Positions 4,477 to 62,800 of a stretch of DNA of 64,000 nucleotides are shown here, in pieces (position 1 is the stretch's first letter; the number at the start of each line of letters is the position of its first letter). The DNA is taken from positions 1 to 64,000 of IMG/VR virus record IMGVR_UViG_3300042544_001590. One strand, written 5' to 3'. The translations under genes were made by a program, and so were the position numbers. The notes under the pieces were generated by a model, which did not search any database, was not told the origin of the DNA, and saw only the letters and a list, made by a program, of their open reading frames with translations.

Positions 4477-5439
4477 ATGGTTAATTTAAACGGAAAGACG
4501 ATATTGGTTACGGGAGGTGCTGGATTTATTGGAAGTAATTTTATTGAATATATTTTATCTCATTATTCTTTTTTAACTCTTATTAATATTGACAAGATGG
4601 GGATCGGTTCAAGACACCTAGAATTTAAACCAAAGCTTGACGGTAACGATTTCTTCAATATTAAAGAAGATATTAGGGGGATTTATAAGTTATATTCAAC
4701 AAACCCAATCAAAATTGATTATGTCTTCCATTTCGCAGCGGAATCTCACGTTGATAGATCGATAGCTGGTGCTTATGATTTTGTTGATAATAATGTTTTG
4801 GGGATGACCCGATTGTTGGAATGGATTAAAGAATGTCAACCACAAGCCAGAGTCATCAATATATCCACGGATGAAGTGTTTGGTCATCTGGAAAAGCATG
4901 GAGCACCTTTCAACGAGAATTGCAAATTCGCCCCCCGTAGCCCATACGCGGCATCCAAGGCATCTGCCGATCTGATCGCCAATTCGTATGTCACCACTTA
5001 TGGATTGGATATCATCACCACCCATTGTTGCAACAATTTCGGTAAACATCAGGCGGATGAAAAATTCATCCCCACGGTGATTCGGAACATGGTTTGGGGT
5101 AACAAGATTCCGGTCTATGGAACGGGAGAGAATATCCGTGAATGGATTCATGTGGACGATCATAACAAATCCCTTTTGGAAATCGCAGAGGGGGGTAGGG
5201 CTGGTTATCGTTACAATATTGGATCAAAGGTGGAGAAGACAAATCTGGAAATGATAGTTGACATTGCTGAAATTCTTGGTAAGGTAGCTGATATTGAATA
5301 CGTGGAAGACAGAAAAGGACATGATTTCCGATATGCGATTGATAGTCTCAATTACCGTAGGCAATTTGAATTGCGGGATCATTCCGAATCTTTGAGAGAG
5401 ACTGTGAACCACTATAAAGAGCAATATTCTACTAAATAA
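4477..5439 (+). CDS. rmlB: dTDP-glucose 4,6-dehydratase (extended SDR)
   Basis: VTGGAGFIGSN, HFAAESHVDRSI, ISTDEV, SPYAASKAS, EKFIP, REWIHVDDH, DRKGHDFRYA. Confidence 0.93.
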   Translation: MVNLNGKTILVTGGAGFIGSNFIEYILSHYSFLTLINIDKMGIGSRHLEFKPKLDGNDFFNIKEDIRGIYKLYSTNPIKIDYVFHFAAESHVDRSIAGAYDFVDNNVLGMTRLLEWIKECQPQARVINISTDEVFGHLEKHGAPFNENCKFAPRSPYAASKASADLIANSYVTTYGLDIITTHCCNNFGKHQADEKFIPTVIRNMVWGNKIPVYGTGENIREWIHVDDHNKSLLEIAEGGRAGYRYNIGSKVEKTNLEMIVDIAEILGKVADIEYVEDRKGHDFRYAIDSLNYRRQFELRDHSESLRETVNHYKEQYSTK

Positions 5440-5458
5440 TATAGACTGAAATAACAAT

Positions 5459-6535
5459 ATGGACGTAAAAACAGAAGTAGTAAAAGCACGGGTTGAAAAG
5501 GGATGGAGTTATCCCATGATCTTTGACACGTATGGAGTTCCCAAAAGCACAGCCCAAGATTGGGTGAAAAAATATGCAGCAGAAAGTGATGAAGAAGAAT
5601 CCTCAACTCCTTACGAGGAATATAAACAAGGATATGTGAACGAAAATCTCCAGAGGGACAAGCCCAAGAAACCCAAGAAATCCGAAGAGGAGATTATGGA
5701 ATTCCTCTCGCAACTTGCTCCAATCCAAGTTCATAGTGGCTATACAGTAGCTCCTTCCAATCTGAATGATTATGCTGTTGTTGGGTCTGATTTCCATTTT
5801 GGGTGTCACGACGAAGCAGCTATTAATATTTTTCTCTATACCATTGAGGAATTGAAACCCAAAACAATCGTTCTCAATGGTGATACCATGGATATGCTCG
5901 CCATCTCCCGCTATCCCAAGGATATCAAAAAACAGTGGAGTCTTCAGGATGAAAGAATTGCATATCATGAATTTTTGGATAACCTCATTGCTGTTTCGGG
6001 CGGTGCTAAGATTTATGAAACGGTATCAAATCACAGCGGACAATCCATTGATGGTAGATGGAGACGCTATCTATCGGAGCGTCTTGGGGAACTCGCGTCA
6101 TTACCAGATATTACGGATAAGCTGAGTTATCAGAACGTGTTCATGGGTGATTATCAGGAGCATGTGGAGCATGTTGATTATGTTGATCTGAACGGGTTGA
6201 TTGTGACACATGGTACGACCGTGCGTGGGGCTGGGGGGGCTTCTGCTAAGGGAGAGATTGAAAAATGGACTACCAGTATCATGCATGGACATACCCACAG
6301 GATTGGAAGCTCATGCAAGAGAATACCAGCTTTTGGTAATCGCCCCGATAGTCAAATTTACGGTTTTGAGGGTGGATGTTTGGGGAGTCTTGATGCGGTT
6401 TATTCATCTACCGCAAATTGGCAACAGGGATTTAACATTGTAGCTCTCGGGGATGAATCTTTTGGTGTTGAGCAAATCATGATCAACAACGGAATTGCTA
6501 ACGTTTCCACACTTGGACAGACTATTAGGGGATAA
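5459..6535 (+). CDS. Calcineurin-like metallophosphoesterase with N-terminal HTH
   Basis: SDFH, NGD..D, SNH, THG, HGHTH motifs; YGVPKSTAQDWVKKY HTH. Confidence 0.8.
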   Translation: MDVKTEVVKARVEKGWSYPMIFDTYGVPKSTAQDWVKKYAAESDEEESSTPYEEYKQGYVNENLQRDKPKKPKKSEEEIMEFLSQLAPIQVHSGYTVAPSNLNDYAVVGSDFHFGCHDEAAINIFLYTIEELKPKTIVLNGDTMDMLAISRYPKDIKKQWSLQDERIAYHEFLDNLIAVSGGAKIYETVSNHSGQSIDGRWRRYLSERLGELASLPDITDKLSYQNVFMGDYQEHVEHVDYVDLNGLIVTHGTTVRGAGGASAKGEIEKWTTSIMHGHTHRIGSSCKRIPAFGNRPDSQIYGFEGGCLGSLDAVYSSTANWQQGFNIVALGDESFGVEQIMINNGIANVSTLGQTIRG

Positions 6536-20634: not shown

Positions 20635-21969
20635 TTATCCAAAATCTGAGTAACCACTAACAAGTGATTTCTCAGATTTCAGACTAAAACAACTCCATCG
20701 ACTAAAATCATAGTCCTTGAAGAGAAACCTTAATTCGTTCAGTTTCTTATTATCTCTCAGATATTCATGAATGCCTTTGTAACCAATATTCTTAGGGTTA
20801 TAGTCCGATAGAATTGAATTCCATCTCTCTTTTATCAGACCCCTATTAATCTTTGGATATAAGACATCCACATCTGAAAATTCTTTACGCTTTTTGATAT
20901 AGCGATTTAAAAACACATGGCAACGGCGAGCAATTTCTAATGCTGCCGCAATGCTGTCGGTTTCCTCTGGATGATCAAGACATCCAACGGTGGAAGAATA
21001 CGCACATATAATCTCTTGGTTTTTGATACCAAGAATGTTAAGACGCTTAATGAGGTTTTGTGAAAATTTTAAACGATTCCAAGAGTTATTAAGGAGTCTA
21101 TTTAGCTTACGTCCTTTATTGTGGTCTTTAGAAGACATTGTAAGCTTCTCAAGACCCACACATTCCACTTTATAATATTTACAGAGATTTGATATGGATT
21201 TGGCAATTTCTACAACCTCGTGATCCTTTTTATTCTTACTATACGTCTCATTCAGCTTGGTAAGATCATAAACACTCTTATGGATGATAGTATCATCATT
21301 GAAATCCCTGATTGTAAATGCGATGTAATTGGGATTTAAATCCAATCCTGTGATTCTATTTTCAATAAATTGGTGTTCTTGTTCCATTAAGACAGATTCA
21401 TCAAAAGTAATATAAATATAATTATTATCTAATTTATAAGTGATCGGGGTGGAATTAAATTCAAAATACGATTGTAACTTTTCAAGCATCTTCCATCTGG
21501 AATTTGAAGTATTTAATTTCAAATTATAATGATCATTTTTAGTGCGTTTGAATATAATTTGTTTATTTATAATATCTAATTTTAATTTTCTATTACCGAG
21601 GGGTTCGTTCCGACCACCATTAAAAAAAGCTGGTCGGCTGTTTTTAATATTATTAAATTCTTCTTTAGTAATTATGCCTTTATTAAAACGTTTCCACTGA
21701 TTAAGTGATCCAAATGTTGTTTTGGTTTGTTTACACTCTTTAGCGGATTTAAAGAGAGCGGAAGCATCTCCAATTTGTGCTGCAAGGATGCTGGCATCAA
21801 CCAAATCATAATTAACATTGTAAGAACTCTTGATTTTTCTGGTGGCGTGGGTGATATCGTGTTTTTCCTTTTTGAAAATATTGAAAGCAATTCTTTTGAT
21901 CTTGTTGCATTCCTTGAGGAATGGTGCAAGATCGGAATCACATTCATATTTGACTTTGAGAGTAGTCAC
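20635..21969 (-). CDS. tnpB: TnpB/Cas12f-like RNA-guided RuvC nuclease, no TnpA
   Basis: RuvC I GLDLNPNYIA, II VGLEKL, III ETDSIAAALEIARR; AYSS motif; no zinc finger; probable GTG start 5 nt after TAAATA. Confidence 0.75.
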   Translation of the reverse strand: MTTLKVKYECDSDLAPFLKECNKIKRIAFNIFKKEKHDITHATRKIKSSYNVNYDLVDASILAAQIGDASALFKSAKECKQTKTTFGSLNQWKRFNKGIITKEEFNNIKNSRPAFFNGGRNEPLGNRKLKLDIINKQIIFKRTKNDHYNLKLNTSNSRWKMLEKLQSYFEFNSTPITYKLDNNYIYITFDESVLMEQEHQFIENRITGLDLNPNYIAFTIRDFNDDTIIHKSVYDLTKLNETYSKNKKDHEVVEIAKSISNLCKYYKVECVGLEKLTMSSKDHNKGRKLNRLLNNSWNRLKFSQNLIKRLNILGIKNQEIICAYSSTVGCLDHPEETDSIAAALEIARRCHVFLNRYIKKRKEFSDVDVLYPKINRGLIKERWNSILSDYNPKNIGYKGIHEYLRDNKKLNELRFLFKDYDFSRWSCFSLKSEKSLVSGYSDFG

Positions 21970-38300: not shown

Positions 38301-38762
38301 ATGCACCCCCAATTCAATCCCCAAGCCCTGCTTAACAAACCTCTGGAAATCTCCTATTGGAAAGATTCCATTGGGGAGGACGCAAAAATCGTTGACATTG
38401 GGGAAGACCAATATAAGATCGTATTTGAGCAAGCACCGGAAGACGATGATCAGGAAGACCTTTTCATTTGGACAACCCAAGAACCGGAATCAATCGAAGG
38501 AGATAGAGCATTCTTCCGAAACATTGGAGCAACAAATTTCTATCTGAAAATCAAACAAAAACTAGAATACAATAACATTATGAAAACAACAGTAAAGGAA
38601 CTGAGTGAGAAGCTGGGAGTAGATACCGTGTATGTGAACGGATTTCTTCAAACCCTAATCAAGATGGGCAAGGCAAGCGTGGTAGGCAAGGTTGAAAAAC
38701 CTAGCGGAACCCGTGGCAAGCCTTCCAATATCTACGAAATCAACGAGGGTATCGTTGACTAA
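38301..38762 (+). CDS. In-frame fusion of two module genes; second part (ATG 38580) is a small HTH-like protein
   Basis: Module at 38556 begins CAAAAACTAG instead of TAAAAACTAG and is read as QKLEYNNI-M. Confidence 0.6.
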   Translation: MHPQFNPQALLNKPLEISYWKDSIGEDAKIVDIGEDQYKIVFEQAPEDDDQEDLFIWTTQEPESIEGDRAFFRNIGATNFYLKIKQKLEYNNIMKTTVKELSEKLGVDTVYVNGFLQTLIKMGKASVVGKVEKPSGTRGKPSNIYEINEGIVD

Positions 38763-38774
38763 CAATTTTCCAAT

Positions 38775-38973
38775 GGAGCAACGGTGTGGAAAATCTTAGA
38801 CACACAGCAGAGTCGCTTGAAGTATCTCTGGATTAGTTTATCAGGCAAGAAAGAAGGAAAGACGAAACCTTCCCCCTGACGCACGAGTAGCCAGTCGTGG
38901 TGAAAGCCAGATATGTTGAGTAGATCGTGGGCATGATCAGCCTAGAGTGGGGGTAAGACCCACTTGCTCCACC
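38775..38973 (+). ncRNA. Unknown ~200-nt RNA with tRNA-like acceptor, D-like and T-like arms
   Basis: GGAGCAA/TTGCTCC+ACC; GTGT/ACAC; GTGGG-7nt-CCCAC; internal TCAGG/CCTGA, GAAGG/CCTTC, CACGA/TCGTG; no convincing ORF. Confidence 0.7.
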
Positions 38974-39060
38974 TTTTTAATAAATAAAACACTAACCACC
39001 GCGAAAATGCGTGGCCTGACGGCAAATGGAAGCTCTACCAAGTGGGGGACTGGCATTCTG

Positions 39061-39183
39061 CATAACGCCGATGTGATGGCATCGCTGCCGAGAGCGAGCG
39101 TCGATCCTCCAACCAAACACTGATATGCCAAACGACTCCGACAACACAGCGGGCAGCGATTGTCCATCCACGCCTTGTTCGCT
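39061..39183 (-). mobile_element. Integron attC-like site 1
   Basis: AAC-GCCGATGT-GATGG-CATCGCTGCC ... GGCAGCGAT-TGT-CCATC-CACGCCTT-GTTCGCT: imperfect palindrome with unpaired spacer and extra bases on one arm. Confidence 0.7.
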
Positions 39184-39427
39184 TTTTCGAGCCACTTGGG
39201 AGGAGAGAGATGGTAAAATGGAACCTGTGAATACTCCTGATCTCTTCGTGTGGGCCTGCGTGAACACAAAAACCGGAGAGGTGGAGATGACGGAAATCCA
39301 GCCCTTCGACGACGATCTCAATGAGAACCTTGTGGAAGGGTGGGAGTGGAGACGCTTCCGACTCATTGAAGCGAACGTCCAAGGCCATGCGACGGCGCGC
39401 AGTGGCCCGAATCCACCACCGACTTGA
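39125..39427 (+). CDS. Cassette-borne hypothetical protein
   Basis: GC-rich; starts inside attC1 loop and ends inside attC2 loop. Confidence 0.6.
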   Translation: MPNDSDNTAGSDCPSTPCSLFRATWEERDGKMEPVNTPDLFVWACVNTKTGEVEMTEIQPFDDDLNENLVEGWEWRRFRLIEANVQGHATARSGPNPPPT

Positions 39428-39464
39428 ACGGCTAGTTCCCGTTGCCATGACTCCCTTGTTAGCC
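39370..39464 (-). mobile_element. Integron attC-like site 2
   Basis: AGCGAAC-GTCCAAGG-CCATGCGACGG ... CCGTTGCCATG-ACTCCCTT-GTTAGCC. Confidence 0.65.
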
Positions 39465-39475
39465 TTCTTAATTTT

Positions 39476-39691
39476 ATGACCTACATACCAGACCCAATCG
39501 AAAGAGGCGAGATGCGTGCCGAGGCCGCATACGATGAAATGATCCAACCTGACGGCAGGATGAAATGCCCGTGCGGAGAACTGTTCGACCCCGACAGCGA
39601 GGGCGGAACACTCAGCCCCGATCCGTATGCAATGCCCGTCTGCGGGAAATGCTGCGAGGAGTATTTTTCTCAGGCTAACAGTAACTTATGA
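39476..39691 (+). CDS. Cassette-borne small zinc-binding hypothetical protein
   Basis: CPCG...CGKC; GC-rich; bounded by GTTAGCCT (39458) and AGGCTAAC (39672). Confidence 0.65.
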   Translation: MTYIPDPIERGEMRAEAAYDEMIQPDGRMKCPCGELFDPDSEGGTLSPDPYAMPVCGKCCEEYFSQANSNL

Positions 39692-39778
39692 CCCCCAATA
39701 AGTGTCCATAACCATGCCGGAATCAATTACACGCTTTCCTTACTACATTCTTAAAAACTAGAATACAATACAAAAACA

Positions 39779-40339
39779 ATGAGCAAAACGCTAATTACAA
39801 CACTGTCGGTTCTTGGAGGTGTCATCCTCCTTGGAGTAATCCTTTTGGTTTCCGTTCTGGGAAGCTTCAACTCTTACACAAGGTTTGAGAATCTGGCGAA
39901 AGCGGCACAAACGGATAATAAGAACATCCTTGATAACACCCGAAAATCCATTCGGGAAGCTGCCAACGTATCGGATAAGGAAGTGGAAGCCCTTACCAAT
40001 ATCATCACGGGTTATGCTGATGCGAGAGGGGGCAACACTGCTGGAGACGGTCAACTTGTCACTGTAGGTATGGTGACGGAAGCAGTCCCAAGCATCCAAG
40101 GCATTGAAACGCTGAAGAACCTGCAAAACATCGTGGTTGCAGGACGAAAGGATTGGCAAATGGCACAAACACGATTGGTTGATATCAAACGACAAGCGGA
40201 TAATATGATTGGAACCGTACCATCTGGAACCATTCTGAAATGGTTTGGTAAAAAGGAAATTGAAATTATCATCGTAACTTCCAAGGAAACCGAAGGTAAT
40301 TTTGCCACTGGTGAGGATAATTCCAATTGGGTTGAGTGA
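39779..40339 (+). CDS. Membrane-anchored helical protein (LemA-like)
   Basis: N-terminal TM helix then a helical domain; paired with the next membrane gene. Confidence 0.45.
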   Translation: MSKTLITTLSVLGGVILLGVILLVSVLGSFNSYTRFENLAKAAQTDNKNILDNTRKSIREAANVSDKEVEALTNIITGYADARGGNTAGDGQLVTVGMVTEAVPSIQGIETLKNLQNIVVAGRKDWQMAQTRLVDIKRQADNMIGTVPSGTILKWFGKKEIEIIIVTSKETEGNFATGEDNSNWVE

Positions 40340-41409
40340 TGAGCGGATACTGGATATTCCTGTTGATGATAATCCCCGTGATCGCGGGGGTTGTCTCATG
40401 GCAAAAGTTCCACACAATTGAATTGTGGGAATCGGCAACAAGCGTGGGAGCGGCACTGGTTGTGATCATCTCTGTTTTTGGCATATCACAATGTAGCCTG
40501 AGTCATGATACTTATACCGAATCCGGTAGGATTATGTCGGTTGTCCACACTCCTAAATGGAAGGCTGAATGGACGGAGACGGAGACATACACCACAACCG
40601 ATTCCAAGGGTAAATCCCATACACATACAAGACTGGTTACAAGAAGAAAAACACATTCCCCCACATGGGTTGCAGATACGACAATCGGTAGTATGCAAAT
40701 CACGGAAGGATATTTTAATTACATTGGGAGACAACATGGAATTCGTAAAGAGTTGGGGTATCGTCCCGATTATGATTCAGGAGATAGATATGATTATCAT
40801 TCCACGGTATCTGATGATCCCGAATTTTGTGATTATCCGGTCAATGGAACTGCCATGTGGTTAAATCCAATCCTAACCCAAAAGGGATTGCGTGGATATG
40901 AAAAGCTATCAGACAAGGAAATCCAACAATACGGACTATTTGATTATCCGAAGCATGATAAATTCAAGTCATCCCGATTGTTGGGGGGTGTTCCCCTAAG
41001 CCATTGGGATTGGGATAAGATGAATACCTATCTATATGATCAAAGGGGGGTGAATGTTCTCATGGTCAAATTGGGTAGCATTGATACTGCCAAGAAATTC
41101 CAACAACATTGGAAGAACGGTAGGAAGAATGATCTGGTTCTATGCTATGGTGATGGTTGGTCTTATGTGTTTGGATGGACTGATAAGGAACTGGTTAAGA
41201 TGAATCTTCAGACGATCTTGTTGGATAATCCAATTGATATTAATATCATACCTTTGATAAAATCGGAAATTCTGAAAAATTACGAGCCTCATAATTGGGA
41301 GCAATATCAGGACGATGAATTTGTGGTAGAGACTTGGATGATCGTCACGGCATTTCTCCTGATGATCACAACCCAAGCAGGACTCTACTACAAGTTCCAT
41401 AAAAACTAG
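40336..41409 (+). CDS. Membrane protein with large soluble domain
   Basis: Two N-terminal and one C-terminal hydrophobic segments. Confidence 0.65.
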   Translation: MMSGYWIFLLMIIPVIAGVVSWQKFHTIELWESATSVGAALVVIISVFGISQCSLSHDTYTESGRIMSVVHTPKWKAEWTETETYTTTDSKGKSHTHTRLVTRRKTHSPTWVADTTIGSMQITEGYFNYIGRQHGIRKELGYRPDYDSGDRYDYHSTVSDDPEFCDYPVNGTAMWLNPILTQKGLRGYEKLSDKEIQQYGLFDYPKHDKFKSSRLLGGVPLSHWDWDKMNTYLYDQRGVNVLMVKLGSIDTAKKFQQHWKNGRKNDLVLCYGDGWSYVFGWTDKELVKMNLQTILLDNPIDINIIPLIKSEILKNYEPHNWEQYQDDEFVVETWMIVTAFLLMITTQAGLYYKFHKN

Positions 41410-41423
41410 CGTATAATCGAAGT

Positions 41424-44400
41424 ATGAAACCAACAATCAGTCTGATTAAGTCCATCATTTGGAAAATGTATTATCACCTATCTTTAGGCAAGGATTACCA
41501 ATCCAGTATGAAGAGTGCATCCAACATCTTCTCCAACGTGATCGACTCCACGAACGGTAGGGTGTCGCATTTCCATAACATCAAAGGTGATCGCATTCGG
41601 GGATGGCATAAGCGAATCAAGTTCAATGTCAATGTCACACAACATCCTTTAATCTCAAAATATTATTAATATGATGACTGATATTTACAAAATCGGAGAA
41701 TACACCATCTTAATTGAACGTGATGAAGATGATGATAATTTCTGGTATTATCATAATGTAATTCTACCAAACGGAGAACAACATATGTTAGATACTTGCA
41801 GAAATATCAATAATAAGGATATTGCGGCGTTTATATCATTCTATGAAGTCCATGGTAGATTTCCAACACGTAAGGATCATCCGACGAATAAGGTTGTAGG
41901 GTTGAATGCCAAGCGGATTTCGGAGATTAAATAACACCATGAGCCAATGTCGCTACTGTCAGTCCCAATCGTATGGTCTAGGTTGTCCCGCTTCCCCATG
42001 GGGGAGACATGAGCATTTCAACAATGAAAAGAAATGTGAATTTTGCGGCGGGACTGGATACGGTTCGGGATGCACACTTAGTCCTGTTAAAAAGCATAGG
42101 CATGGAAGCGGCAAGAACAAGTGTAGGTGGTGTGGAAATACTGCGATGGGTATGGGCTGTATCCATTCCCCAAGCGGATTCCATGAGAAGTGATGTTTAA
42201 AAACTAGATGATACTTAGGATATGACAAAAGCAGATTCTTTCAAGGAAAAATTACAAAATCTTTTGGATGATTTCAACGCATCCATCATATTCAATTTCA
42301 ATCCACCAGATATGAAGATGTTGGAATATTGTAATGGTTTTCAAGTCTGTTTTGAACTGGAGGTAGATAAGTTTCAATTCGTCCAATTGACTGGTGGGGA
42401 TAACTTTTCAATTGAAAAAGATACTATCCTTAAAAACTAGGCGATACTTGGTGTATGAAAATTATCCCGACTGATTACAAAATCGAACACGATTTGAACG
42501 AACACACTTATTATATTGTTCGTAGAATGAGCCTTAAATATAATAATAAATGGTTTGTTACCATGTATGACCGAAATGCTTTTTTAGTGGAGAGCGACAT
42601 GGGTTGGTCTTCTTGGACTTGTGATGAACATGGTTATAATACCCCCGAAGAAGCTTTGGAAGCTTGGGAAAGATACATAAAAACTAAGGGATACTAACCA
42701 CGACATGAAAACATTCACAATTGAACAAGTCCTCGAATATGTCGAAGGGTGGTTGGGTGCTGATGACGACAAGCAAACCCTAAACATGAACCAGATCAAG
42801 GCAATGCTGAACAATGCTCTGGTATGTGTGGACGATCCAAGCGATGGGATCGAAGAGTATGTGGAGCGTAAGGGTATTCCACTGTATAAGGTATTAGGAT
42901 TACCAAAAGATTCATTTAAAGATTTCATCGAAAACAACAAGGATTTGGTATAAAACAATTTAATAATATGAAAGATGTGGACTTTGATAATGATTTCAAG
43001 CTGGGTAAAGCCAAGCATAAAAATCTTGGGAATGTTGAAATAACTGAAGCATGTTTATTCATGCAAGATTGTAATCCCGATCCTTCGACTCTTTATGTTG
43101 AACATGATGGTGATATTAAAGAAGTATCTTACAATATGATGATTCCCGAATCTAAAAAATAAATATGAGAACTGAATACACAAACAGTTGGGGAAAACGC
43201 ATCATAATGACTGATTGTGTGGAGTATTGGGAAGACCCTTTCATCTGTGATGATGTTGGGGAGCCGAAGGGTCAATGTGGAAGCTGTGGTCATAAGTGGT
43301 ATGAACATGAATTGGATGCTCTGCCATTGATTGCCAGAACATCCGCATTGGAAATCCAAGATCGGGAATTTTCAATTTTAAGAAATAAATAATATGATTA
43401 ACGCAAACGAAGCACGGGAACTATCAGGCAAGACGATTCAGGAATTGGCCGAGGATTTTGATGAGCCTATCCGCAAAGCTGCCAAGGATGGCAAGCGGAG
43501 CATTTGTCATTACCACGGAACGCTGGAAAACGAAGCGTATTCCAGAACTGAAAAGTGGGATAAATTCGTGGCACACATGGATGATCTTGGGTTTACCGTT
43601 TCCCTTCATTACGAAGAGAGACAATTTGTGGATATGCGTATCAATGTCAAATGGGAGTGACTTTTAAAAACTAACACACAATAGCTTTGTTCTCTCAGGG
43701 GGTGATCTCCCCTTTCTCCGAGATTCCGTAGCATGGCAGTATAAATGGAGACGGAGAGGACTTTACTTTAAATATTATCATGGGCAGACCACAACAAATT
43801 GAAAAGGAACTTGATTGGGAATTTGCCACACATTGGGGTGAAAAACCTTGGGGAATCAAGAAGAAATCCCATAAGTGGGAGAAGGATCAACAACATCGTC
43901 GGGAGCGTAGGAGAGCGAATGACGATCCTGAATGTGGTGCGGAGTATCGCAAGTATGATGGGTTTATTTGGTGATAAAAACTAGAGGATACTTGAGCCAT
44001 GAACGACGACACTTACGCGCTTCGCATGATTGCGATAGCCAATGCTGAGATTGCGCGGGTCAACCTTCGCGTTGAATCCATGAAAGCTGAAAATACTCAA
44101 CGTATGGGAGATGGATTATCCCTAGCTTATACTGAAAAGGCTTTCATTGATGAGGAAGCGGGACTCAATTACGCAATTTCCCTATTACAATTTTAATATT
44201 ATGGAAGATTTCATAGATAAATTTGAAGAGTGGACAGACGAAGAACTCACCCAAAGGTGGAACTATCTGGAAACCAAACCGCTATCCCATTATGTGTCCC
44301 AAACGATGGATGACATTGAGGCAAGTCTTAGCTATCGGAGGGTGGTAGCTTGGGATGCGGATGGTAAGATCACCCACAGGGATTAAAAACTAGATTACAC

Positions 44401-57900: not shown

Positions 57901-58557
57901 ATGACAACAATTGAATTTTGCAGCAAATACTCTCTTAGTGAAATGTGTGAGGAAGGACGGAATTTCGCTTTGAGTCTTGAAACAATGTCTCAAGTTTGGG
58001 AAAATTGTAGAAATCCGAGTTGGCTTTTCTGGATTCTCGACAAATGCAAGCCGCTGGATAAGGAACAATCCGTGAGATTGTCCATTGCATTTGCGGAAAC
58101 TTGTCTTATTAATGTTCCCGATGGAGAAACTCGCCCCAAACTTGCGATTGAAGCCTCAAAAGCATGGCTTGATAATCCATGCGAAGAAACAGAGTTAGCA
58201 GCAACATCAGCAGCAGAGTCAGCATCAGTAGCAGCATCAGCAGCATGGTCAGCACGGTCAGCAGCAGAGTCAGCAGCACGGTCAGCAGCATGGTCAGCAT
58301 GGTCAGCACGGTCAGCAGCACGGTCAGCAGCAGAGTCAGCAGCATGGTCAGCAGCAGAGTCAGCAGCATGGTCAGCAGAGTCAGCAGCAGAGTCAGCAGC
58401 ACGGTCAGCAGCACGGTCAGCAGCATGGTCAGCACGGTCAGCACGGTCAGCAGCAGAGTCAGCAGCATGGTCAGCAGCAGAGTCAGCAGCACGGTCAGCA
58501 GCACGGTCATCGCAATGCAATACGATACGGGAAATGATTTCAAACCCCTTCGGTTAA
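57901..58557 (+). CDS. Protein with low-complexity SA(A)W/R/E repeat tract
   Basis: GTCAGCA(GCA) 9/12-bp units ~58195-58510; N-terminal RP..AIEA..AWL domain. Confidence 0.75.
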   Translation: MTTIEFCSKYSLSEMCEEGRNFALSLETMSQVWENCRNPSWLFWILDKCKPLDKEQSVRLSIAFAETCLINVPDGETRPKLAIEASKAWLDNPCEETELAATSAAESASVAASAAWSARSAAESAARSAAWSAWSARSAARSAAESAAWSAAESAAWSAESAAESAARSAARSAAWSARSARSAAESAAWSAAESAARSAARSSQCNTIREMISNPFG

Positions 58558-59147: not shown

Positions 59148-59173
59148 TTTTTTAAAAACTAAAACACAATAAC

Positions 59174-59464
59174 GCTGAAGTGCTGGCACCCGCTGTCGAA
59201 AAAACTACAACGAAGCCCCAAATGTCTGATACCGAAAAACTTGCGGAAGCCACTGATAGCGGGTTGCTCCAGCCACGCCTTGTTCGGCTTCTTCCGTGTC
59301 CGTTCTGCGGTTCCGAAGCTCGCATTGGACAAGGCGACGGATGGCCGGGGGAAACCGTGGTCGAGTGCAGCAATGACGAAAACTGCCGCGCTCAAATGTC
59401 CTGCATCTGGGGCGAGAAGAATGAAACCGAACTCTGGAACGCCCGCGCAAATCCTCAGCCGAAC
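59174..59464 (-). mobile_element. Single integron-type cassette (attC 59171-59288) inserted in a module spacer
   Basis: AAC-GCTGAAGT-GCTGG-CACCCGCTGTC ... GATAGCGGGTTG-CT-CCAGC-CACGCCTT-GTTCGGC; far end GCCGAAC; excision restores CACAAT-AACAAC-ATG. Confidence 0.8.
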
Positions 59465-59626
59465 AACATGAAACAACTTGCAACTCTCGCCTTCTATGCG
59501 AAATACGCCGGATGGCAATCCTATCACAAGTCCATGCTTCCCCAAGTCAAAGCCCTAACACGCAAGGGATTTCTGGAAATGAATGAGCATGGGCAAGCGC
59601 GGTTCACGGGAAAGTGTCAAGATTAA
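59222..59626 (+). CDS. Lar-family restriction-alleviation-like protein fused in frame to the resident gene (ATG 59468)
   Basis: LLPCPFCGSEA...VEC....C...WNAR. Confidence 0.65.
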   Translation: MSDTEKLAEATDSGLLQPRLVRLLPCPFCGSEARIGQGDGWPGETVVECSNDENCRAQMSCIWGEKNETELWNARANPQPNNMKQLATLAFYAKYAGWQSYHKSMLPQVKALTRKGFLEMNEHGQARFTGKCQD

Positions 59627-59642
59627 AAAACTAGCCTAGAAT

Positions 59643-59838: not shown

Positions 59839-62800
59839 ATGACCCACAAGGAACACCTGCTCAAAACACAATTCGGATTCATTGCCACCAAGGAAGATGA
59901 GGAAAAGCTTATCGCAGAGGATCGCTTCACACCCGTTCTGGTGCGCTGTGGCAATGGAAGGTTCCGTTGCGCGGTGCAGGATTTGGCACACTTCGTCAAG
60001 GTGATCAATGCCAGCAAAGAGGACTATGTGAGGGACGCATCCGTGACCCTATAAAAACTAAACCATAATAACACCATGTTCGACAAACCAATTGCAACCC
60101 GCCCTTACTCATCCCATCCTGATGATTCCTATCTCCAAGTGGTTCTCCACAAGAACTTCAAGGGGGAATATGTCACCCATATCCAGAATCTCCATACAGG
60201 CGGATTCGTGCATGGCCATTACTTTGGCAAGGACACGGATGCGCTGGAAAAGGCAACCCAAGACTTCAAGAACCGATAAAAACTAAACCATAATCACACC
60301 ATGACCAAGAAATACCTGATAATCAAGCTGGAAGCCAAGGAAAGCCAAATTCCCGATGGTTACAATATGACAACCCGGACGGAATATTTCGGGGTTACAA
60401 CCGGATATCCCTTTCCCCATGACACTCTGGAAGAGGCGGAAGAGGAATTGGCACGGAATATTTACAAGTTTGAGCAATACACGATCATTCCGGTCTATAC
60501 CTACGAATAAAAACTAGATTAAGATAACACCATGACCGAAACACAAGCAAGGCAAGCTCTGGATGCGTGGACAATCAAGACCTATCTGGATTGGGTCAAT
60601 AATTACCTGACCATTGAAAAGATGGCAAGCGATTACAATCTCTCCCCAAAAGGAATGAAAGCAATCCTTGAAAAAGGCAAGGAACTTTATGAAGGATAAA
60701 AAACTAGAATAAGATAAATCCATGCATTACACAATCAATATCTCCCTCAATGGGTATCACTTATTTGCAACAGCGGATCATAGCTTGTGCGATACCCAAG
60801 AATACATCAGATGCTTCGCCATCTTGAAAGCGAAATTTCCTGAAAGCGAAGGATATAAAGTGGATGGAACCCTATGGAAGACAATCGGTAACTCGGTGAA
60901 TGATTCCGGTGATAAAAACTAGAATAAGATAAAGCCATGCAATACAACCTACTGATTGATTGGGGAAACGGAGAGAAAAGCTTTCAGGAATTTGACAACC
61001 TGATCCTAGCTCAAAAAGCAATGGAAAACTCCAAGGACAATCCCGAAATCGAATTTATCATTCTGGTAAAGAGCGAAATGCTGGGATTCTGGTCAAACCC
61101 ATGCAGCGGAGAAGAGGACTGATAAAAACTAGCGTAAGATCAGGACATGAAACAATTCAACCTATTCTGGAAGTTCTCAGGTATTAAGAACTACGACCCC
61201 CACCAAACCATCACCGCAAGGAATCTCCCGGAAGCCTTGGAAATAGCTGCAAACGACCATGGTTTCCTGATTAGGGGAGAAACCCTAAAACGCAACGGCA
61301 ACCGTAGAATTGAATTTTGGGGATATGCCGGGGAAGGAACGATGAAAGTCCCCGCACCGATTATCCAAGGGGTGATTGCCAATGCTTAAAAACTAGCGTA
61401 AGATCAGGACATGACAATCAACGGAATCCAAATTAAGACAACCCTTTCCAACACCAAAAAACCGGATTGGAGCAGGGGCAATCATAACCATTACAAGGTG
61501 CGGATTTCCAAGGGAAGGAATAGCGTATCCTTTGATTACTTTGACAGCATCCACAATACGCAAAATAATGAGGAAGCGGACATGAAAGATATCCTTTTCT
61601 GCTTTGCATCCGATGTGAGCAACGGGCGGGAGGAATTCGATGATTCCATGATGACTCCCAAGCAATACCGAGAATGCAAGCGTGTGGCCAATGCTGCGGA
61701 AAGGATGGGCATTTCCAACGAAACACTGGCGGAATGGTGGCAGCTTTAAAACAAAGGACGCGGGAATCAGTGTGACAAAATGACGCACCTCCACCTAAGT
61801 CTCTGATAGTGTGACAAAATGACGCACTCAAGGTGCGACAAAATGACGCACTGTGACAAAATGACGCACTTTAGGAATAGAAGGATACGAAAGGATAGGG
61901 GAAATAACTTTTAAAAACTAGCGTAAGATTTCAGCATGACGAAATTACTCGACAAAGAACACGTGAAAGCAATGGTAAAAGCTCTGGAAAGCGCGGGCTT
62001 GCCTTTGGAAAAGGATTGGCAAAGCGGGACTGTTCGGGCATACATCAACGGCAAGGAAATCTTCGCCGCTCTGGAGAAGGGCAAGAACCAGCCTTGGATT
62101 GTGCGCCATGTTGATGATCTGTTCGCATAATGTTCCTAATCAGAATGTTCCTTGATATGACATAATCGACAAAGCCAAGTTATATCAAGAGGTTTGGAAT
62201 AATCTTTATGATGCATTTCCTCGCCTATCTCACCACATATACAATTTTCGCGCAATATCTTACCACGTTTTAAATATACATTTGCTGTTGATCGTGCATT
62301 AGCTTTCAATCGCTGAATATCACTAAGTTCTGAATGTTTGGTTCTATTGATTCGCATCCATTCAGCACGGCATGATTTACACCAACGTTGATTATTAACC
62401 CGCTCATTCACTTTACATTTATTACAATATGTCATAATAATACTTAGAATATTGTTCCACATTTGTATAGTGGAACAAGTGATGTTTAAAAACTAGCCTA
62501 GACTGATCACATGAAGGAACTGCCACCGTGCCACAAAGATTCCCCCCTCCATGATAAATGGCTTGTCATTGTCGCTCAAATGGAGGATGAGGGATGCGAT
62601 ACATCCGATGCCCAATCCATAGCCGATATTGAGGTGTTTAAAAACTAGATTAAGATTTAGCTACCAATACAACGCCGGAGCCGCTGCGGAGCGGAGTCCC
62701 CCGCAAAGGGACATATAAAAAAGCTTTTGTCGTTCGATTCCCGGATGCATACGGGATAGAGCAAGAGGACTAGCTATCCTTGGACAAGACGAAAGCGGAG

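What the first reader, a model, noticed from the sequence alone, without database searches (positions are those of the whole stretch)
38990..39715. Integrase-less array of inverted attC cassettes (CALIN-like) in a phage
Seen: two tandem GC-rich cassettes with matched ends, GTTCGCT (39177)/AGCGAAC (39370) and GTTAGCCT (39458)/AGGCTAAC (39672), separated by attC-like palindromes. attC1 shares CACGCCTTGTTCG with the 59 kb attC. Upstream is a headless gene tail (...WPDGKWKLYQVGDWHSA*) ending in GCATAAC, probably a truncated third cassette. At the other end (39680-39712) is a short TTATGAC...GTCCATAA half-palindrome that could be an attI-like or deleted attC entry site. All genes are antisense to the attC polarity and overlap the attC loops, unlike most bacterial cassettes. 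Inference: a phage-adapted cassette class that accumulates by repeated integration.
Basis: partly seen in the sequence, partly recalled or inferred. Interest (0 to 1): 0.82.

Follow-up and report, generated by a model that had tools for sequence, protein, structure and literature searches.

The report
Integron-type gene cassettes in a lake phage
A 207-kb lake-water phage carries small foreign genes packaged as integron-style cassettes, each behind a folded attC recombination site. Near-identical phages carry different cassettes at the same spot, so the site looks like an active gene-swapping locus, of a kind already reported in phages.

Summary
Window 39060-39715 holds two cassette units. Unit B (39066-39375) contains ORF1; unit A (39376-39678) contains ORF2. 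A third, single unit (59173-59463) carries a Lar anti-restriction domain.

Each unit starts with an imperfect hairpin and ends in nnnnAAC, which complements the GTTnnnn after its own hairpin.

- A 99%-identical sister phage has four different units between the same two junctions.
- An 85% relative lacks the island.
- The hairpins share the canonical attC layout: AAC, 5 nt, L box with a bulge after 3 bp, a second bulge near 9 bp, 6 nt, GTT.
- Six of seven L-box pairs covary.
- A covariance model built only from the phage sites finds genuine class 1 integron attC sites at their exact coordinates. It matches on the strand opposite to the phage ORFs.

The cassette genes are therefore inverted relative to their attC. 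ORF1 and the Lar ORF start inside the attC loop; ORF2 starts just after its site.

No integrase lies in the 64-kb window, and the other 143 kb was not seen. W1 (39370-39464) is degenerate. attC clusters without an integrase are already published for phages (Qi 2023), so this is a new variant, backed by unusually clear evidence of cassette turnover.

The parts
38990..39065 (+). Left flank shared by both alleles. A start-less reading frame ends in TAA inside GCATAAC. It may be the right-hand remnant of an older, truncated cassette.
   Evidence: The frame is shown. The stretch is identical in the sister allele L001 up to about 39081. No homologue of the tail was found in the held loci.
39060..39183 (-). 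attC-type site W0. On the minus (top) strand it reads AGCGAAC-AAGGC-GTGGATGG...CCATCAC-ATCGGC-GTTATGC. It has a 20-bp imperfect stem and a roughly 60-nt loop that contains the ORF1 start codon.
   Evidence: The architecture detector calls it on the minus strand only, with 5/6-nt spacers and bulges after 3, 7, 9 and 17 bp on one arm. It is homologous to L166a with compensatory arm changes.
39066..39375 (.). Cassette unit B (310 bp): W0 hairpin plus ORF1, bounded by GCATAA|C and AGCGAA|C. Its own ends are matched, GTTCGCT with AGCGAAC.
   Evidence: In L166, homology covers the hairpin (score z about 6) and the ORF (87%) and stops at the AAC; the next 110 nt give z about 0.8.
39125..39427 (+). 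ORF1, 100 aa, of unknown function and a member of a widespread small phage protein family. Its N-terminus (..DCPSTPCSLF..) is encoded by the attC loop, 3' arm and R box.
   Evidence: Twenty homologues at 73-98% identity. It is a plain operon gene in L165 and a cassette in L166. No Pfam, PHROG or NCBIfam match.
39370..39464 (-). W1, a degenerate and probably hybrid attC. It keeps both R boxes (AGCGAAC and GTTAGCC), but its arms pair poorly. Its 3' arm resembles that of L166b.
   Evidence: Folding is no better than shuffles. It is the best non-training match of model R2 in the window, end to end at these coordinates, but only 13.6 bits, E=0.11. Its 3' arm is 87% identical over 31 nt to L166 917-947.
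39376..39678 (.). Cassette unit A (303 bp): W1 plus ORF2, ending in GGCTAA|C. Its own ends are matched, GTTAGCC with GGCTAAC.
   Evidence: Four different contexts diverge directly after GGCTAAC or the equivalent AAC: window, L001, L014 and L012.
39476..39691 (+). ORF2, 71 aa, a four-cysteine zinc-ribbon-like small phage protein. The R box GGCTAAC lies in its last codons (..SQAN..).
   Evidence: Family alignment A3 has invariant C31, C33, C56 and C59. It is 94.5% identical at the DNA level in an unrelated 51% GC phage.
39679..39715 (-). Fixed right-hand end of the array, an attI-like or truncated attC half-site. On the minus strand it reads TTATGGAC-loop-GTCATAA-GTTACT-G|TT, with no partner R box carrying AAC.
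   Evidence: It is identical in both alleles, and the alleles diverge exactly at the G|TT. Its hairpin folds no better than chance. A related copy lies on the other side of ORF2 in L014.
59155..59172 (+). Phage promoter-like motif AAAACTAAAACACAAT+AA, cut off from its gene by the 59-kb cassette.
   Evidence: The motif occurs 45 times in the window and ATG follows at +6 in 36 of them. Removing 59173-59463 restores motif+AACAAC+ATG.
59167..59288 (-). attC-type site W59. On the minus strand it reads GCCGAAC-AAGGC-GTGGCTGG...CCAGCAC-TTCAGC-GTTATTG. Its loop holds the start codon of the Lar ORF.
   Evidence: Called by the detector with a 19-bp stem. It shares CACGCCTTGTTCG with W0.
59173..59463 (.). 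Single cassette unit (291 bp) inserted at an AAC/GTT between the -10 box and the ATG of a leaderless phage gene. Its own ends are matched, GTTCGGC with GCCGAAC.
   Evidence: Homologues of the Lar protein stop before the fused C-terminal 52 aa.
59222..59626 (+). Lar-family (restriction alleviation) ORF read in frame into the resident 52-aa phage gene (59468-59626).
   Evidence: Pfam PF14354 E=6e-7 and TIGR03655 E=2e-6 on residues 23-76. The N-terminal leader MSDTEKLAEA.DSGLLQPRLV, encoded by the attC, is shared by proteins with different bodies.

Best explanation
These are integron-type gene cassettes sitting in a phage genome.

**Anatomy.** Each mobile unit is an attC recombination site followed by a small gene. 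The attC polarity is on the minus strand, so the plus strand, which carries the genes, corresponds to the recombinogenic 'bottom' strand. ORF1 and the Lar ORF start inside the attC loop, and ORF2 starts just after its site. All three are co-directional with phage transcription.

**Mechanism.** Units are exchanged by single-strand, structure-specific recombination at the conserved triplet, G|TT on the minus strand and AA|C on the plus strand. This explains three things:
- The 4 variable R-box bases after a unit's hairpin complement the 4 bases at that unit's far end.
- Two 99%-identical phages differ by whole units between fixed junctions at 39065|39066 and 39678|39679.
- A lone unit at 59 kb sits precisely between a promoter and its leaderless gene, as in insertion at a secondary GTT ('attG'-type) site.

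**Shown:** site architecture, covariation, junctions, allele replacement, and sharing of cassettes with unrelated phages.

**Inferred:**
- The enzyme is an IntI-type integron integrase, supplied by the host or by the unseen 143 kb of the phage.
- Single-stranded phage replication intermediates provide the folded substrate.
- The cargo (one Lar anti-restriction domain, small zinc-ribbon and unknown proteins) serves host takeover or counter-defence.
For: **Allele replacement**
- L001-L005 (99% identical) carry 1315 bp in place of window 39081-39677. L007/L008 (85%) lack the island altogether.

**Matched ends**
- Own-end R boxes match perfectly in 8 of 9 units: GTTCGCT/AGCGAAC, GTTAGCC/GGCTAAC, GTTCGGC/GCCGAAC, GTTCGTC/GACGAAC, GTTCGCC/GGCGAAC, GTTCGCA/TGCGAAC (L013 and L033) and the homologous GTTCGCT/AGCGAAC unit in L166.
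- The ninth, GTTCTCG/GGAGAAC, matches at 6 of 7 bases.
- Within one hairpin, the outer 4 R-box positions pair in only 10 of 32 cells.

**attC architecture**
- One detector (AAC, 5 nt, stem of at least 11 bp, 5/6 nt, GTT) finds the known attCs of five class 1 arrays on the gene-sense strand.
- In the window it finds only W0 and W59 plus one weak hit, on the antisense strand. Block shuffles give 0-1 hits.
- Canonical bulges lie after 3 and 9 bp. Phage bulges lie after 3-4 and 8-9 bp, the second being A as in the aadA1-type sites.

**Covariation**
- Six of 7 L-box pairs change on both sides and 94.5% of cells pair, against about 40% when the partners are slid.

**Reciprocal model test**
- Model R2, trained only on 8 phage sites, finds 12 class 1 attCs at their exact coordinates with E from 9e-6 to 0.01, on the top strand. 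No false hit scores better.
- It also finds held-out phage sites L1d, L166x and two in L041.

**Unit boundaries**
- ORF1 unit against L166: the upstream hairpin is homologous, the ORF is 87% identical, and nothing aligns after the AAC.
- Removing the 59-kb unit restores the promoter+6 nt+ATG format seen in 36 of 45 motif copies. Lar homologues lack the fused tail.

**DNA-level conservation**
- GCCTTGTTCG is translated in two different frames, PCSLF and PRLVR.

**Foreign composition**
- The island is 52-57% GC against 41% for the window.
Against: - No integrase was found: Pfam on 68 window ORFs and tblastn with IntI1 were both negative. The catalyst is therefore unknown.
- A narrow model built from 12 class 1 attCs did not recover the phage sites.
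- W1 and the right-hand half-site are weak.
- No empty site, excised circle or read-level junction was recovered.
- Whole-site folding z-scores are modest, -1.6 to -3.6 for the good sites.
- In some phages the same genes occur without any attC.
- In L014, ORF2 is flanked by the small hairpin motif rather than by a full attC.
- All cassettes of this family seen so far are inverted, which is unusual for integron cargo.
Confidence: 0.8

Rival explanations
1. The hairpins are phage RNA or regulatory elements, such as terminators, processing sites or translational control of the start codon buried in the loop. Genes would then be swapped by short-homology recombination at the conserved ends, like the promoter/stem-loop 'PeSL' modules described for T4-type phages. 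No integrase would be involved.
For: - The sites are transcribed in sense with the genes and hold start codons in their loops.
- The conserved ends (GCATAACGCC.ATGTG, CACGCCTTGTTCG) could serve as microhomology. Window-L001 identity runs about 15 nt past the AAC.
- No integrase lies in the window.
- W1 looks like a product of recombination inside two hairpins.
Against: - This does not explain why each unit's far end complements the 4 variable bases after its own hairpin.
- It does not explain the exact canonical attC spacing and bulge positions.
- It does not explain why a model of these sites retrieves true integron attCs.
- It does not explain the base-precise insertion at 59 kb.
- The phage's own promoter motif is absent from the internal unit boundaries.
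Confidence: 0.1
2. The array has canonical polarity. Each gene would belong with the hairpin downstream of it, the plus strand would be the top strand, and boundaries would lie at G|TT on the plus strand.
For: - The matched-end rule is symmetric and fits either polarity.
- ORF ends overlap the next site's R box, as in many bacterial cassettes.
- L166b is called on both strands by the detector.
Against: - The detector and model R2 match the minus strand for W0, W59, L1a, L1b, L1d, L013, L166a, L166c and L166x.
- Alleles diverge at AA|C, not at plus-strand G|TT.
- The ORF1 cassette shares its upstream hairpin, not its downstream one, with L166.
- There is no hairpin after GCCGAAC at 59464.
Confidence: 0.05
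3. The matched ends are chance inverted repeats in a GC-rich stretch of ordinary phage mosaic DNA. The region would be only a hypervariable 'moron' island reshuffled by illegitimate recombination.
For: - Short inverted repeats are numerous here.
- W1 and the right-end hairpin fold no better than shuffles.
- A shared 13-mer within 64 kb is not in itself remarkable.
Against: - The L box covaries.
- R2 reaches E-values down to 9e-6 on independent true attCs.
- Junctions recur at AAC across five loci.
- Shuffled windows give 0-1 detector hits, all of them weak.
Confidence: 0.03
4. The units are non-autonomous single-strand transposons of the IS200/IS605 (PATE) kind. They would be moved by a Y1 transposase that recognises subterminal hairpins and a short target (T/G)AAC.
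For: - The hairpins are imperfect with bulged bases, insertion is next to a fixed short motif, and there is no target duplication.
Against: - Each unit has only one hairpin, not one at each end.
- The far end pairs with the hairpin flank, so a circle rebuilds an R box. That is the integron rule, not the IS608 rule.
- The sites match attC models.
- No TnpA-like hit was reported among the window ORFs.
Confidence: 0.02

Closest known systems
Clusters of attC sites lacking an integron-integrase (CALINs) in virulent and temperate phages (Qi, Rajabal, Ghaly, Tetu, Gillings 2023, PMC9892861)
   Same: - attC sites and cassettes inside phage genomes with no integrase nearby.
- Some arrays there have unusual orientation.
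- Cargo there includes anti-restriction functions (orphan methyltransferases); here it includes a Lar domain.
- That paper showed phage attCs are recombined by IntI1.
   Different: - All genes here lie on the attC bottom strand, and ORF1 and the Lar ORF start in the attC loop.
- Two co-occurring alleles of one phage differ by whole cassettes.
- The same cassettes recur in unrelated phages.
- One cassette splits a promoter from its gene.
- No recombination assay has been done on these sites.
Bacterial integron cassette arrays (class 1 mobile integrons; sedentary chromosomal integrons)
   Same: - R''/L''/L'/R' architecture with 5- and 6-nt spacers.
- Bulges after 3 and 9 bp.
- Invariant AAC and GTT triplets.
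- Chimeric R boxes within the array and matched ones within a cassette.
- Site lengths of 95-131 nt, within the range I recall for attC sites (57-141 nt, own knowledge).
   Different: - No intI, attI or Pc platform is in view.
- The genes are inverted relative to the attC.
- The cargo consists of phage genes.
- The first bulged base is G, A or C on the top strand rather than the C of aadA-type sites. Other class 1 sites also have G there.
attG insertion: integrase-mediated cassette insertion at genomic 5'-GWT-3' sites outside att sites (Loot et al., bioRxiv 10.1101/2022.09.11.507474)
   Same: The 59-kb unit sits alone at a GTT (plus-strand AAC) that is part of an ordinary promoter region, with no resident attC or attI.
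   Different: That work was in E. coli with IntI1-3. Here the event is inferred from sequence only, and in a phage.
PeSL 'promoter-early stem-loop' mobile regulatory cassettes of T4-type phages
   Same: Small genes in a hyperplastic phage region are flanked by stem-loops and differ between close relatives.
   Different: - PeSLs are promoter plus terminator-like repeats thought to act through homology.
- The sites here lack the phage promoter motif, obey the integron matched-end rule, and match attC models.

Membership tests
integron attC recombination site | Inverted R''/R' boxes with the conserved triplets AAC and GTT | tested here: met
   AAC and GTT are invariant in 8 of 8 aligned phage sites. 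W1, L1d and L166x have the same triplets.
integron attC recombination site | L''/L' boxes separated from the R boxes by unpaired spacers, with extrahelical bases all on one arm marking the recombinogenic strand | tested here: met
   Spacers are 5 and 6 nt and bulges lie after 3-4 and 8-9 bp on the same arm. These are the same values as in aadA1, aadA2, cmlA, VIM-4, dfrA1 and estX attCs taken from plasmid records. About 25 bulged positions lie on the top-strand 5' arm against 5 on the other arm.
integron attC recombination site | Structure conserved while sequence varies (covariation) | tested here: met
   Six of 7 L-box pairs change on both sides and 94.5% of cells pair. None of 500 shuffles reaches the observed score, and slid controls pair 38-42%.
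integron attC recombination site | Recognition by an attC covariance model | tested here: inconclusive
   The reciprocal test is positive: model R2, built from phage sites, finds 12 true class 1 attCs at E<=0.01 with no better-scoring false hit. The forward test with my narrow 12-sequence class 1 model R1 is negative. IntegronFinder's own model was not available.
integron attC recombination site | Cassette boundaries at G|TT of R', so that a cassette's first bases complement its own R'' | tested here: met
   Allele and context breakpoints lie at AA|C on the plus strand. Own ends match perfectly in 8 of 9 units. The promoter is restored precisely at 59 kb.
integron attC recombination site | Recombined by an integron integrase as a folded single strand | not testable with these tools
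   This needs an attC x attI assay or read-level circles. Only assembled contigs were available.
complete integron | intI gene with attI and promoter next to the array | tested here: not met
   There is no Phage_integrase or IntI hit in 68 window ORFs, and no tblastn hit with IntI1 in the window. The contig's other 143 kb was not seen. Neighbours are a tRNA-like RNA and a virion structural gene.
CALIN (two or more attC sites, no integrase nearby) | At least two attC sites close together without intI | tested here: inconclusive
   The window allele has one strong site (W0), one marginal site (W1, E=0.11) and a half-site. The sister allele L001 has three strong sites, and L166 has at least four. 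The criterion is met for the locus as a population but is borderline for this allele.
IS200/IS605-type single-strand transposon (PATE) | Subterminal hairpins at both ends and a Y1 transposase | tested here: not met
   There is one hairpin per unit, and no transposase family appears among the window hits.
PeSL-like mobile regulatory cassette | Phage early promoter plus stem-loop repeated at each module boundary | tested here: not met
   The phage motif AAAACTAR...AAT occurs 45 times in the window but not at 39066, 39376 or 39679.

The most novel reading that the evidence does not exclude
Lake phages may share their own pool of 'attC-first' cassettes. In these, the gene is written on the attC bottom strand and often starts inside the attC loop, so a cassette is expressed by read-through phage transcription wherever it lands. 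An integron integrase met during infection (host-borne, or phage-borne as the IntI fragment next to an ORF2 piece in L012 hints) would shuffle these cassettes between unrelated, even virulent, phages. That would give phages an integron-like counter-defence toolbox that mirrors the defence cassettes of bacterial integrons.
Probability: 0.35. Interest if true: 0.8.

Novelty: new variant of a known kind. Interest (0 to 1): 0.62.

Why it matters
Integrons are seen as a bacterial device, and phage attC clusters were reported only in 2023, as static features of isolated genomes. This locus adds four things.

- **Turnover in nature.** Two co-occurring alleles of one phage differ by whole cassettes at base-precise junctions.
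- **A lone insertion.** One cassette has landed at a secondary GTT inside a promoter.
- **Sharing between phages.** The same cassettes occur in unrelated phages of 47-62% GC.
- **A consistent inverted design.** ORF1 and the Lar ORF begin inside the attC loop, so the site also encodes the protein's N-terminus, and in two different reading frames.

One cargo is a Lar anti-restriction domain. This makes the idea that phages use integron recombination to exchange counter-defence genes directly testable. It also offers a defined set of sites for asking which integrase acts on phage DNA during infection.

Tried and rejected
- **Whole-site folding and a generic minimum-free-energy scan for AAC...GTT hairpins.** Both were too noisy. 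W0 was missed and the top hits were unrelated.
- **Rfam.** It returned no attC match and nothing else relevant in the region.
- **GenBank phages.** No DNA relative, only remote protein hits for the flanking structural gene, and none for the upstream gene.
- **Empty-site and relative searches.** The 59-kb downstream gene, the tRNA-Leu 3' end and the predicted empty 39-kb junction returned only the source contig or nothing. The single metagenome scan returned one L001-type fragment. Exact-protein look-ups of two small neighbours were not on record. All contigs carrying the 71-aa neighbour also carry the Lar cassette.
- **Reads.** Only Logan contigs were available. They show no joints, but contigs of run X4 break at 39066 and 39078, as expected where two alleles branch.
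- **Integrase hunt.** The L012 IntI-like fragment found nothing in viral contigs or plasmids.
- **Host inference.** The ORF2 family hit one genome contig, binned as Saccharibacteria at 62% GC. It is identical to phage contig L013 and probably mis-binned.
- **Canonical-to-phage model R1.** It failed because it was too narrow and too short.
- **MAFFT alignment A5.** It misaligned the 3' ends and was discarded for A6.
- **Protein atlas.** It gave only 'viral hypothetical' neighbours.
- **L041 4306.** I first dismissed it as coincidence inside a coding region. R2 later scored 4226-4317 at E=1.3e-3, so it stays open.
Full report
**1. What is there**

The window equals positions 1-64000 of a 207,489-bp viral contig from lake-water metagenomes. 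The genome is 41% GC, and almost all genes lie on the plus strand.

Most genes are preceded by the motif AAAACTAR..A.AAT. ATG follows exactly 6 nt later in 36 of 45 copies, which suggests leaderless transcripts.

Between two conserved genes lies a 1-kb island of 52-57% GC. The flanking genes are 38301-38762 and the virion structural gene 39779-40339 (phrog_1383).

**2. Comparative anatomy**

Ten related viral loci were fetched.

- Five of them (L001-L005) are 99% identical on both sides. They carry 1315 bp in place of window 39081-39677.
- Sequence identity resumes exactly after GGCTAAC (window) or GGAGAAC (L001) on the right. On the left it stops shortly after GCATAAC.
- Two relatives at 85% identity (L007/L008) lack the whole island and hold a different tRNA-like sequence there. 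More distant relatives have unrelated genes at the locus.
- An exact-protein look-up of the flanking gene across large collections shows the same two alleles repeatedly.
- Contigs of one lake sample break at 39066 and 39078, as expected if both alleles co-occur.

**3. The units**

On the plus strand each unit reads: C, 5-6 nt, imperfect hairpin (16-20 bp stem, 60-95-nt loop), about 5 nt, GTTnnnn, gene, n'n'n'n'AA.

- *Window:* unit B is 39066-39375 (hairpin W0, ORF1). Unit A is 39376-39678 (hairpin W1, ORF2).
- *L001:* four units at 4572-4923, 4924-5276, 5277-5527 (attC truncated) and 5528-5901.
- *A third locus at 59 kb:* one unit at 59173-59463 (hairpin W59) carrying a Lar restriction-alleviation domain.

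The four variable bases after a unit's hairpin complement the four bases at that unit's far end in 8 of 9 units. The eight include homologous cassettes in other phages with a different box, GTTCGCA/TGCGAAC in L013 and L033, and the GTTCGCT/AGCGAAC unit in L166. The ninth unit matches at 6 of 7 bases.

The two R boxes of a single hairpin pair only at AAC/GTT: 10 of 32 outer cells pair. This pattern is what integron recombination predicts.

**4. Are the hairpins attC sites?**

I verified a remembered aadA1 attC against plasmid records; it matches at 100% in 1962 records. I then extracted 12 attCs from five class 1 arrays.

*Architecture detector.* The detector requires AAC, 5 nt, a stem of at least 11 bp, 5/6 nt and GTT.
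- It finds the known attCs on the gene-sense strand.
- In the window it finds only W0 and W59, plus one weak hit at 20908-20966. W0 and W59 are called on the strand antisense to the genes.
- Shuffled windows give 0-1 hits.

*Bulges.* Canonical sites bulge after 3 and 9 bp on the top-strand 5' arm. Phage sites bulge after 3-4 and 8-9 bp on the same arm, and the second bulge is A, as in aadA1.

*Covariation.* Six of seven L-box pairs covary, with 94.5% of cells paired against about 40% for slid controls.

*Covariance models.*
- A model made from the 12 class 1 sites did not find the phage sites. It is narrow and dominated by 60-nt sites.
- The reverse test was clear. Model R2, built only from eight phage sites on their minus strand, found twelve genuine attCs end to end at their exact coordinates. 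E-values ran from 9e-6 to 0.01, all on the top strand, and no false hit ranked above them.
- R2 also found held-out phage sites: L1d at 1.6e-5, L166x at 5.4e-6, and two in L041.
- W1 is the best non-training hit in the window but only marginal, at E=0.11.

**5. Polarity and unit boundaries**

Four lines of evidence agree that the plus strand is the attC bottom strand and that the crossover is AA|C on it.

- The strand on which the detector and R2 match.
- The position of the allele breakpoints.
- The ORF1 cassette in L166. It shares the upstream hairpin (alignment score 91 against 43±8 for shuffles, with compensatory arm changes) and the gene (87% identity). Nothing aligns after the AAC (score 37 against 31±7).
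- The 59-kb unit. Removing it joins ...CACAATAA to CAACATG and restores the motif+6 nt+ATG format of a 52-aa gene. Homologues of the Lar protein end before the fused tail.

The genes are therefore inverted relative to canonical cassettes.

Start codons of ORF1, the Lar ORF and L001 units 1 and 2 lie in the attC loop. The conserved DNA motif GCCTTGTTCG is translated as PCSLF in some cassettes and PRLVR in others. Its conservation therefore acts at the DNA level.

**6. W1 and the ends of the array**

- *W1.* Its 3' arm resembles that of L166b, while its 5' side continues the ORF1 tail. It looks like a fusion of two attCs, which would explain its poor pairing.
- *Right flank (39679-39715).* On the minus strand it is an L''-loop-L'-spacer-G|TT half-site with no partner R box. 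It is the fixed end in both alleles. A related copy lies on the other side of ORF2 in L014.
- *Left flank (38990-39065).* This start-less frame ends in GCATAAC. It could be the remnant of an older unit, but I found no homologue.

**7. Cargo and spread**

- *ORF2* belongs to a conserved four-cysteine family. It is 94.5% identical at the DNA level in an unrelated 51% GC phage that encodes a family A DNA polymerase. It occurs as an attC cassette in L013/L154 and L033, and as a plain operon gene in other phages.
- *ORF1* behaves the same way.
- No member was found in a cultured bacterial genome.
- One 905-bp contig joins an integron-integrase N-terminal fragment (TIGR02249, E=6e-5) to the 3' part of ORF2 ending in GGCTAAC. 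It could be a chimeric assembly, so it is only a lead.

**8. The enzyme**

No tyrosine recombinase lies in the window, and the other 143 kb could not be read. The involvement of an IntI-type integrase is therefore inferred from the substrate, not shown.

**9. Relation to what is known**

- attC clusters lacking an integrase have been reported in virulent phages, and their attCs were shown to recombine with attI1 under IntI1 (PMC9892861).
- Insertion of cassettes at genomic GWT sites is also described (bioRxiv 10.1101/2022.09.11.507474).

This case is therefore not a new category. It is a new variant for four reasons:

- a uniformly inverted design, with several genes starting inside the attC loop;
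- natural allele replacement;
- cassette sharing among unrelated phages;
- an attG-like insertion that splits a promoter from its gene.

**10. Verdict**

My confidence that these are attC-type cassettes exchanged at AA|C is about 0.8. Confidence that an integron integrase is the catalyst is lower, at about 0.6.

Noticed in passing
window, whole length (e.g. 37674, 38558, 39754, 58797, 59817): A promoter-like motif AAAACTA[AG]..A[CT]AAT occurs 45 times on the plus strand. ATG follows exactly 6 nt later in 36 cases, which suggests a phage-specific promoter driving leaderless mRNAs. The same motif also precedes tRNA genes at 59627 and 59722.
   Followed up: partly
window 38774-38978 (+): A roughly 200-nt non-coding stretch just left of the array folds with a 7-bp closing stem GGAGCAA/TTGCTCC followed by ACC and a T-run. 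It also has a D-arm-like and a T-arm-like hairpin. This looks like a tRNA-like or small tmRNA-like RNA, but ARAGORN and Rfam do not call it, and the fold z-score is only -1.5.
   Followed up: partly
L008 5865-5970: In the 85% relative, the same intergenic position holds a different tRNA-like sequence. It has acceptor, D and T arms but a long insert in the anticodon region. ARAGORN does not call it.
   Followed up: partly
window 57901-58557 (+): A 218-aa ORF has a second half made of about 60% GC tandem repeats encoding SAA[ERW]SAA-type units.
   Followed up: no
L012 559-894: A 905-bp metagenome contig encodes the N-terminal 77 aa of an integron integrase (TIGR02249, E=6e-5) fused in frame to the C-terminal half of ORF2, ending in GGCTAAC. 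It is either a decayed integron next to this cassette family or a chimeric assembly.
   Followed up: partly
window 41400-44300 versus L023 5890-8500: The gene content a few kb downstream of the array also differs between the two 99%-identical alleles, with different small ORFs. No attC-like site was detected there, so a second variable region may use another mechanism.
   Followed up: no
window 62043-62116 (-): Model R2 gives a marginal hit (13.1 bits, E=0.14) with perfectly complementary R boxes, CATCAAC and GTTGATG, inside a coding region. It is probably chance.
   Followed up: no
L041 2510-2600 and 4226-4317 (-): A 9.7-kb viral contig that uses the same promoter motif has two further attC-like sites (R2 E=3.6e-6 and 1.3e-3). 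The phenomenon may therefore be wider in this phage group.
   Followed up: no
L166 243-1464: A 4.6-kb contig in an NCBI metagenome assembly (GCA_043528095.1) carries at least five attC-like sites in a row next to a phage portal gene. This is a larger array of the same family.
   Followed up: partly
window (ORF not located; among the 68 scanned): One window ORF carries GIY-YIG and NUMOD3 domains, typical of a homing endonuclease. That is another possible source of local mosaicism.
   Followed up: no
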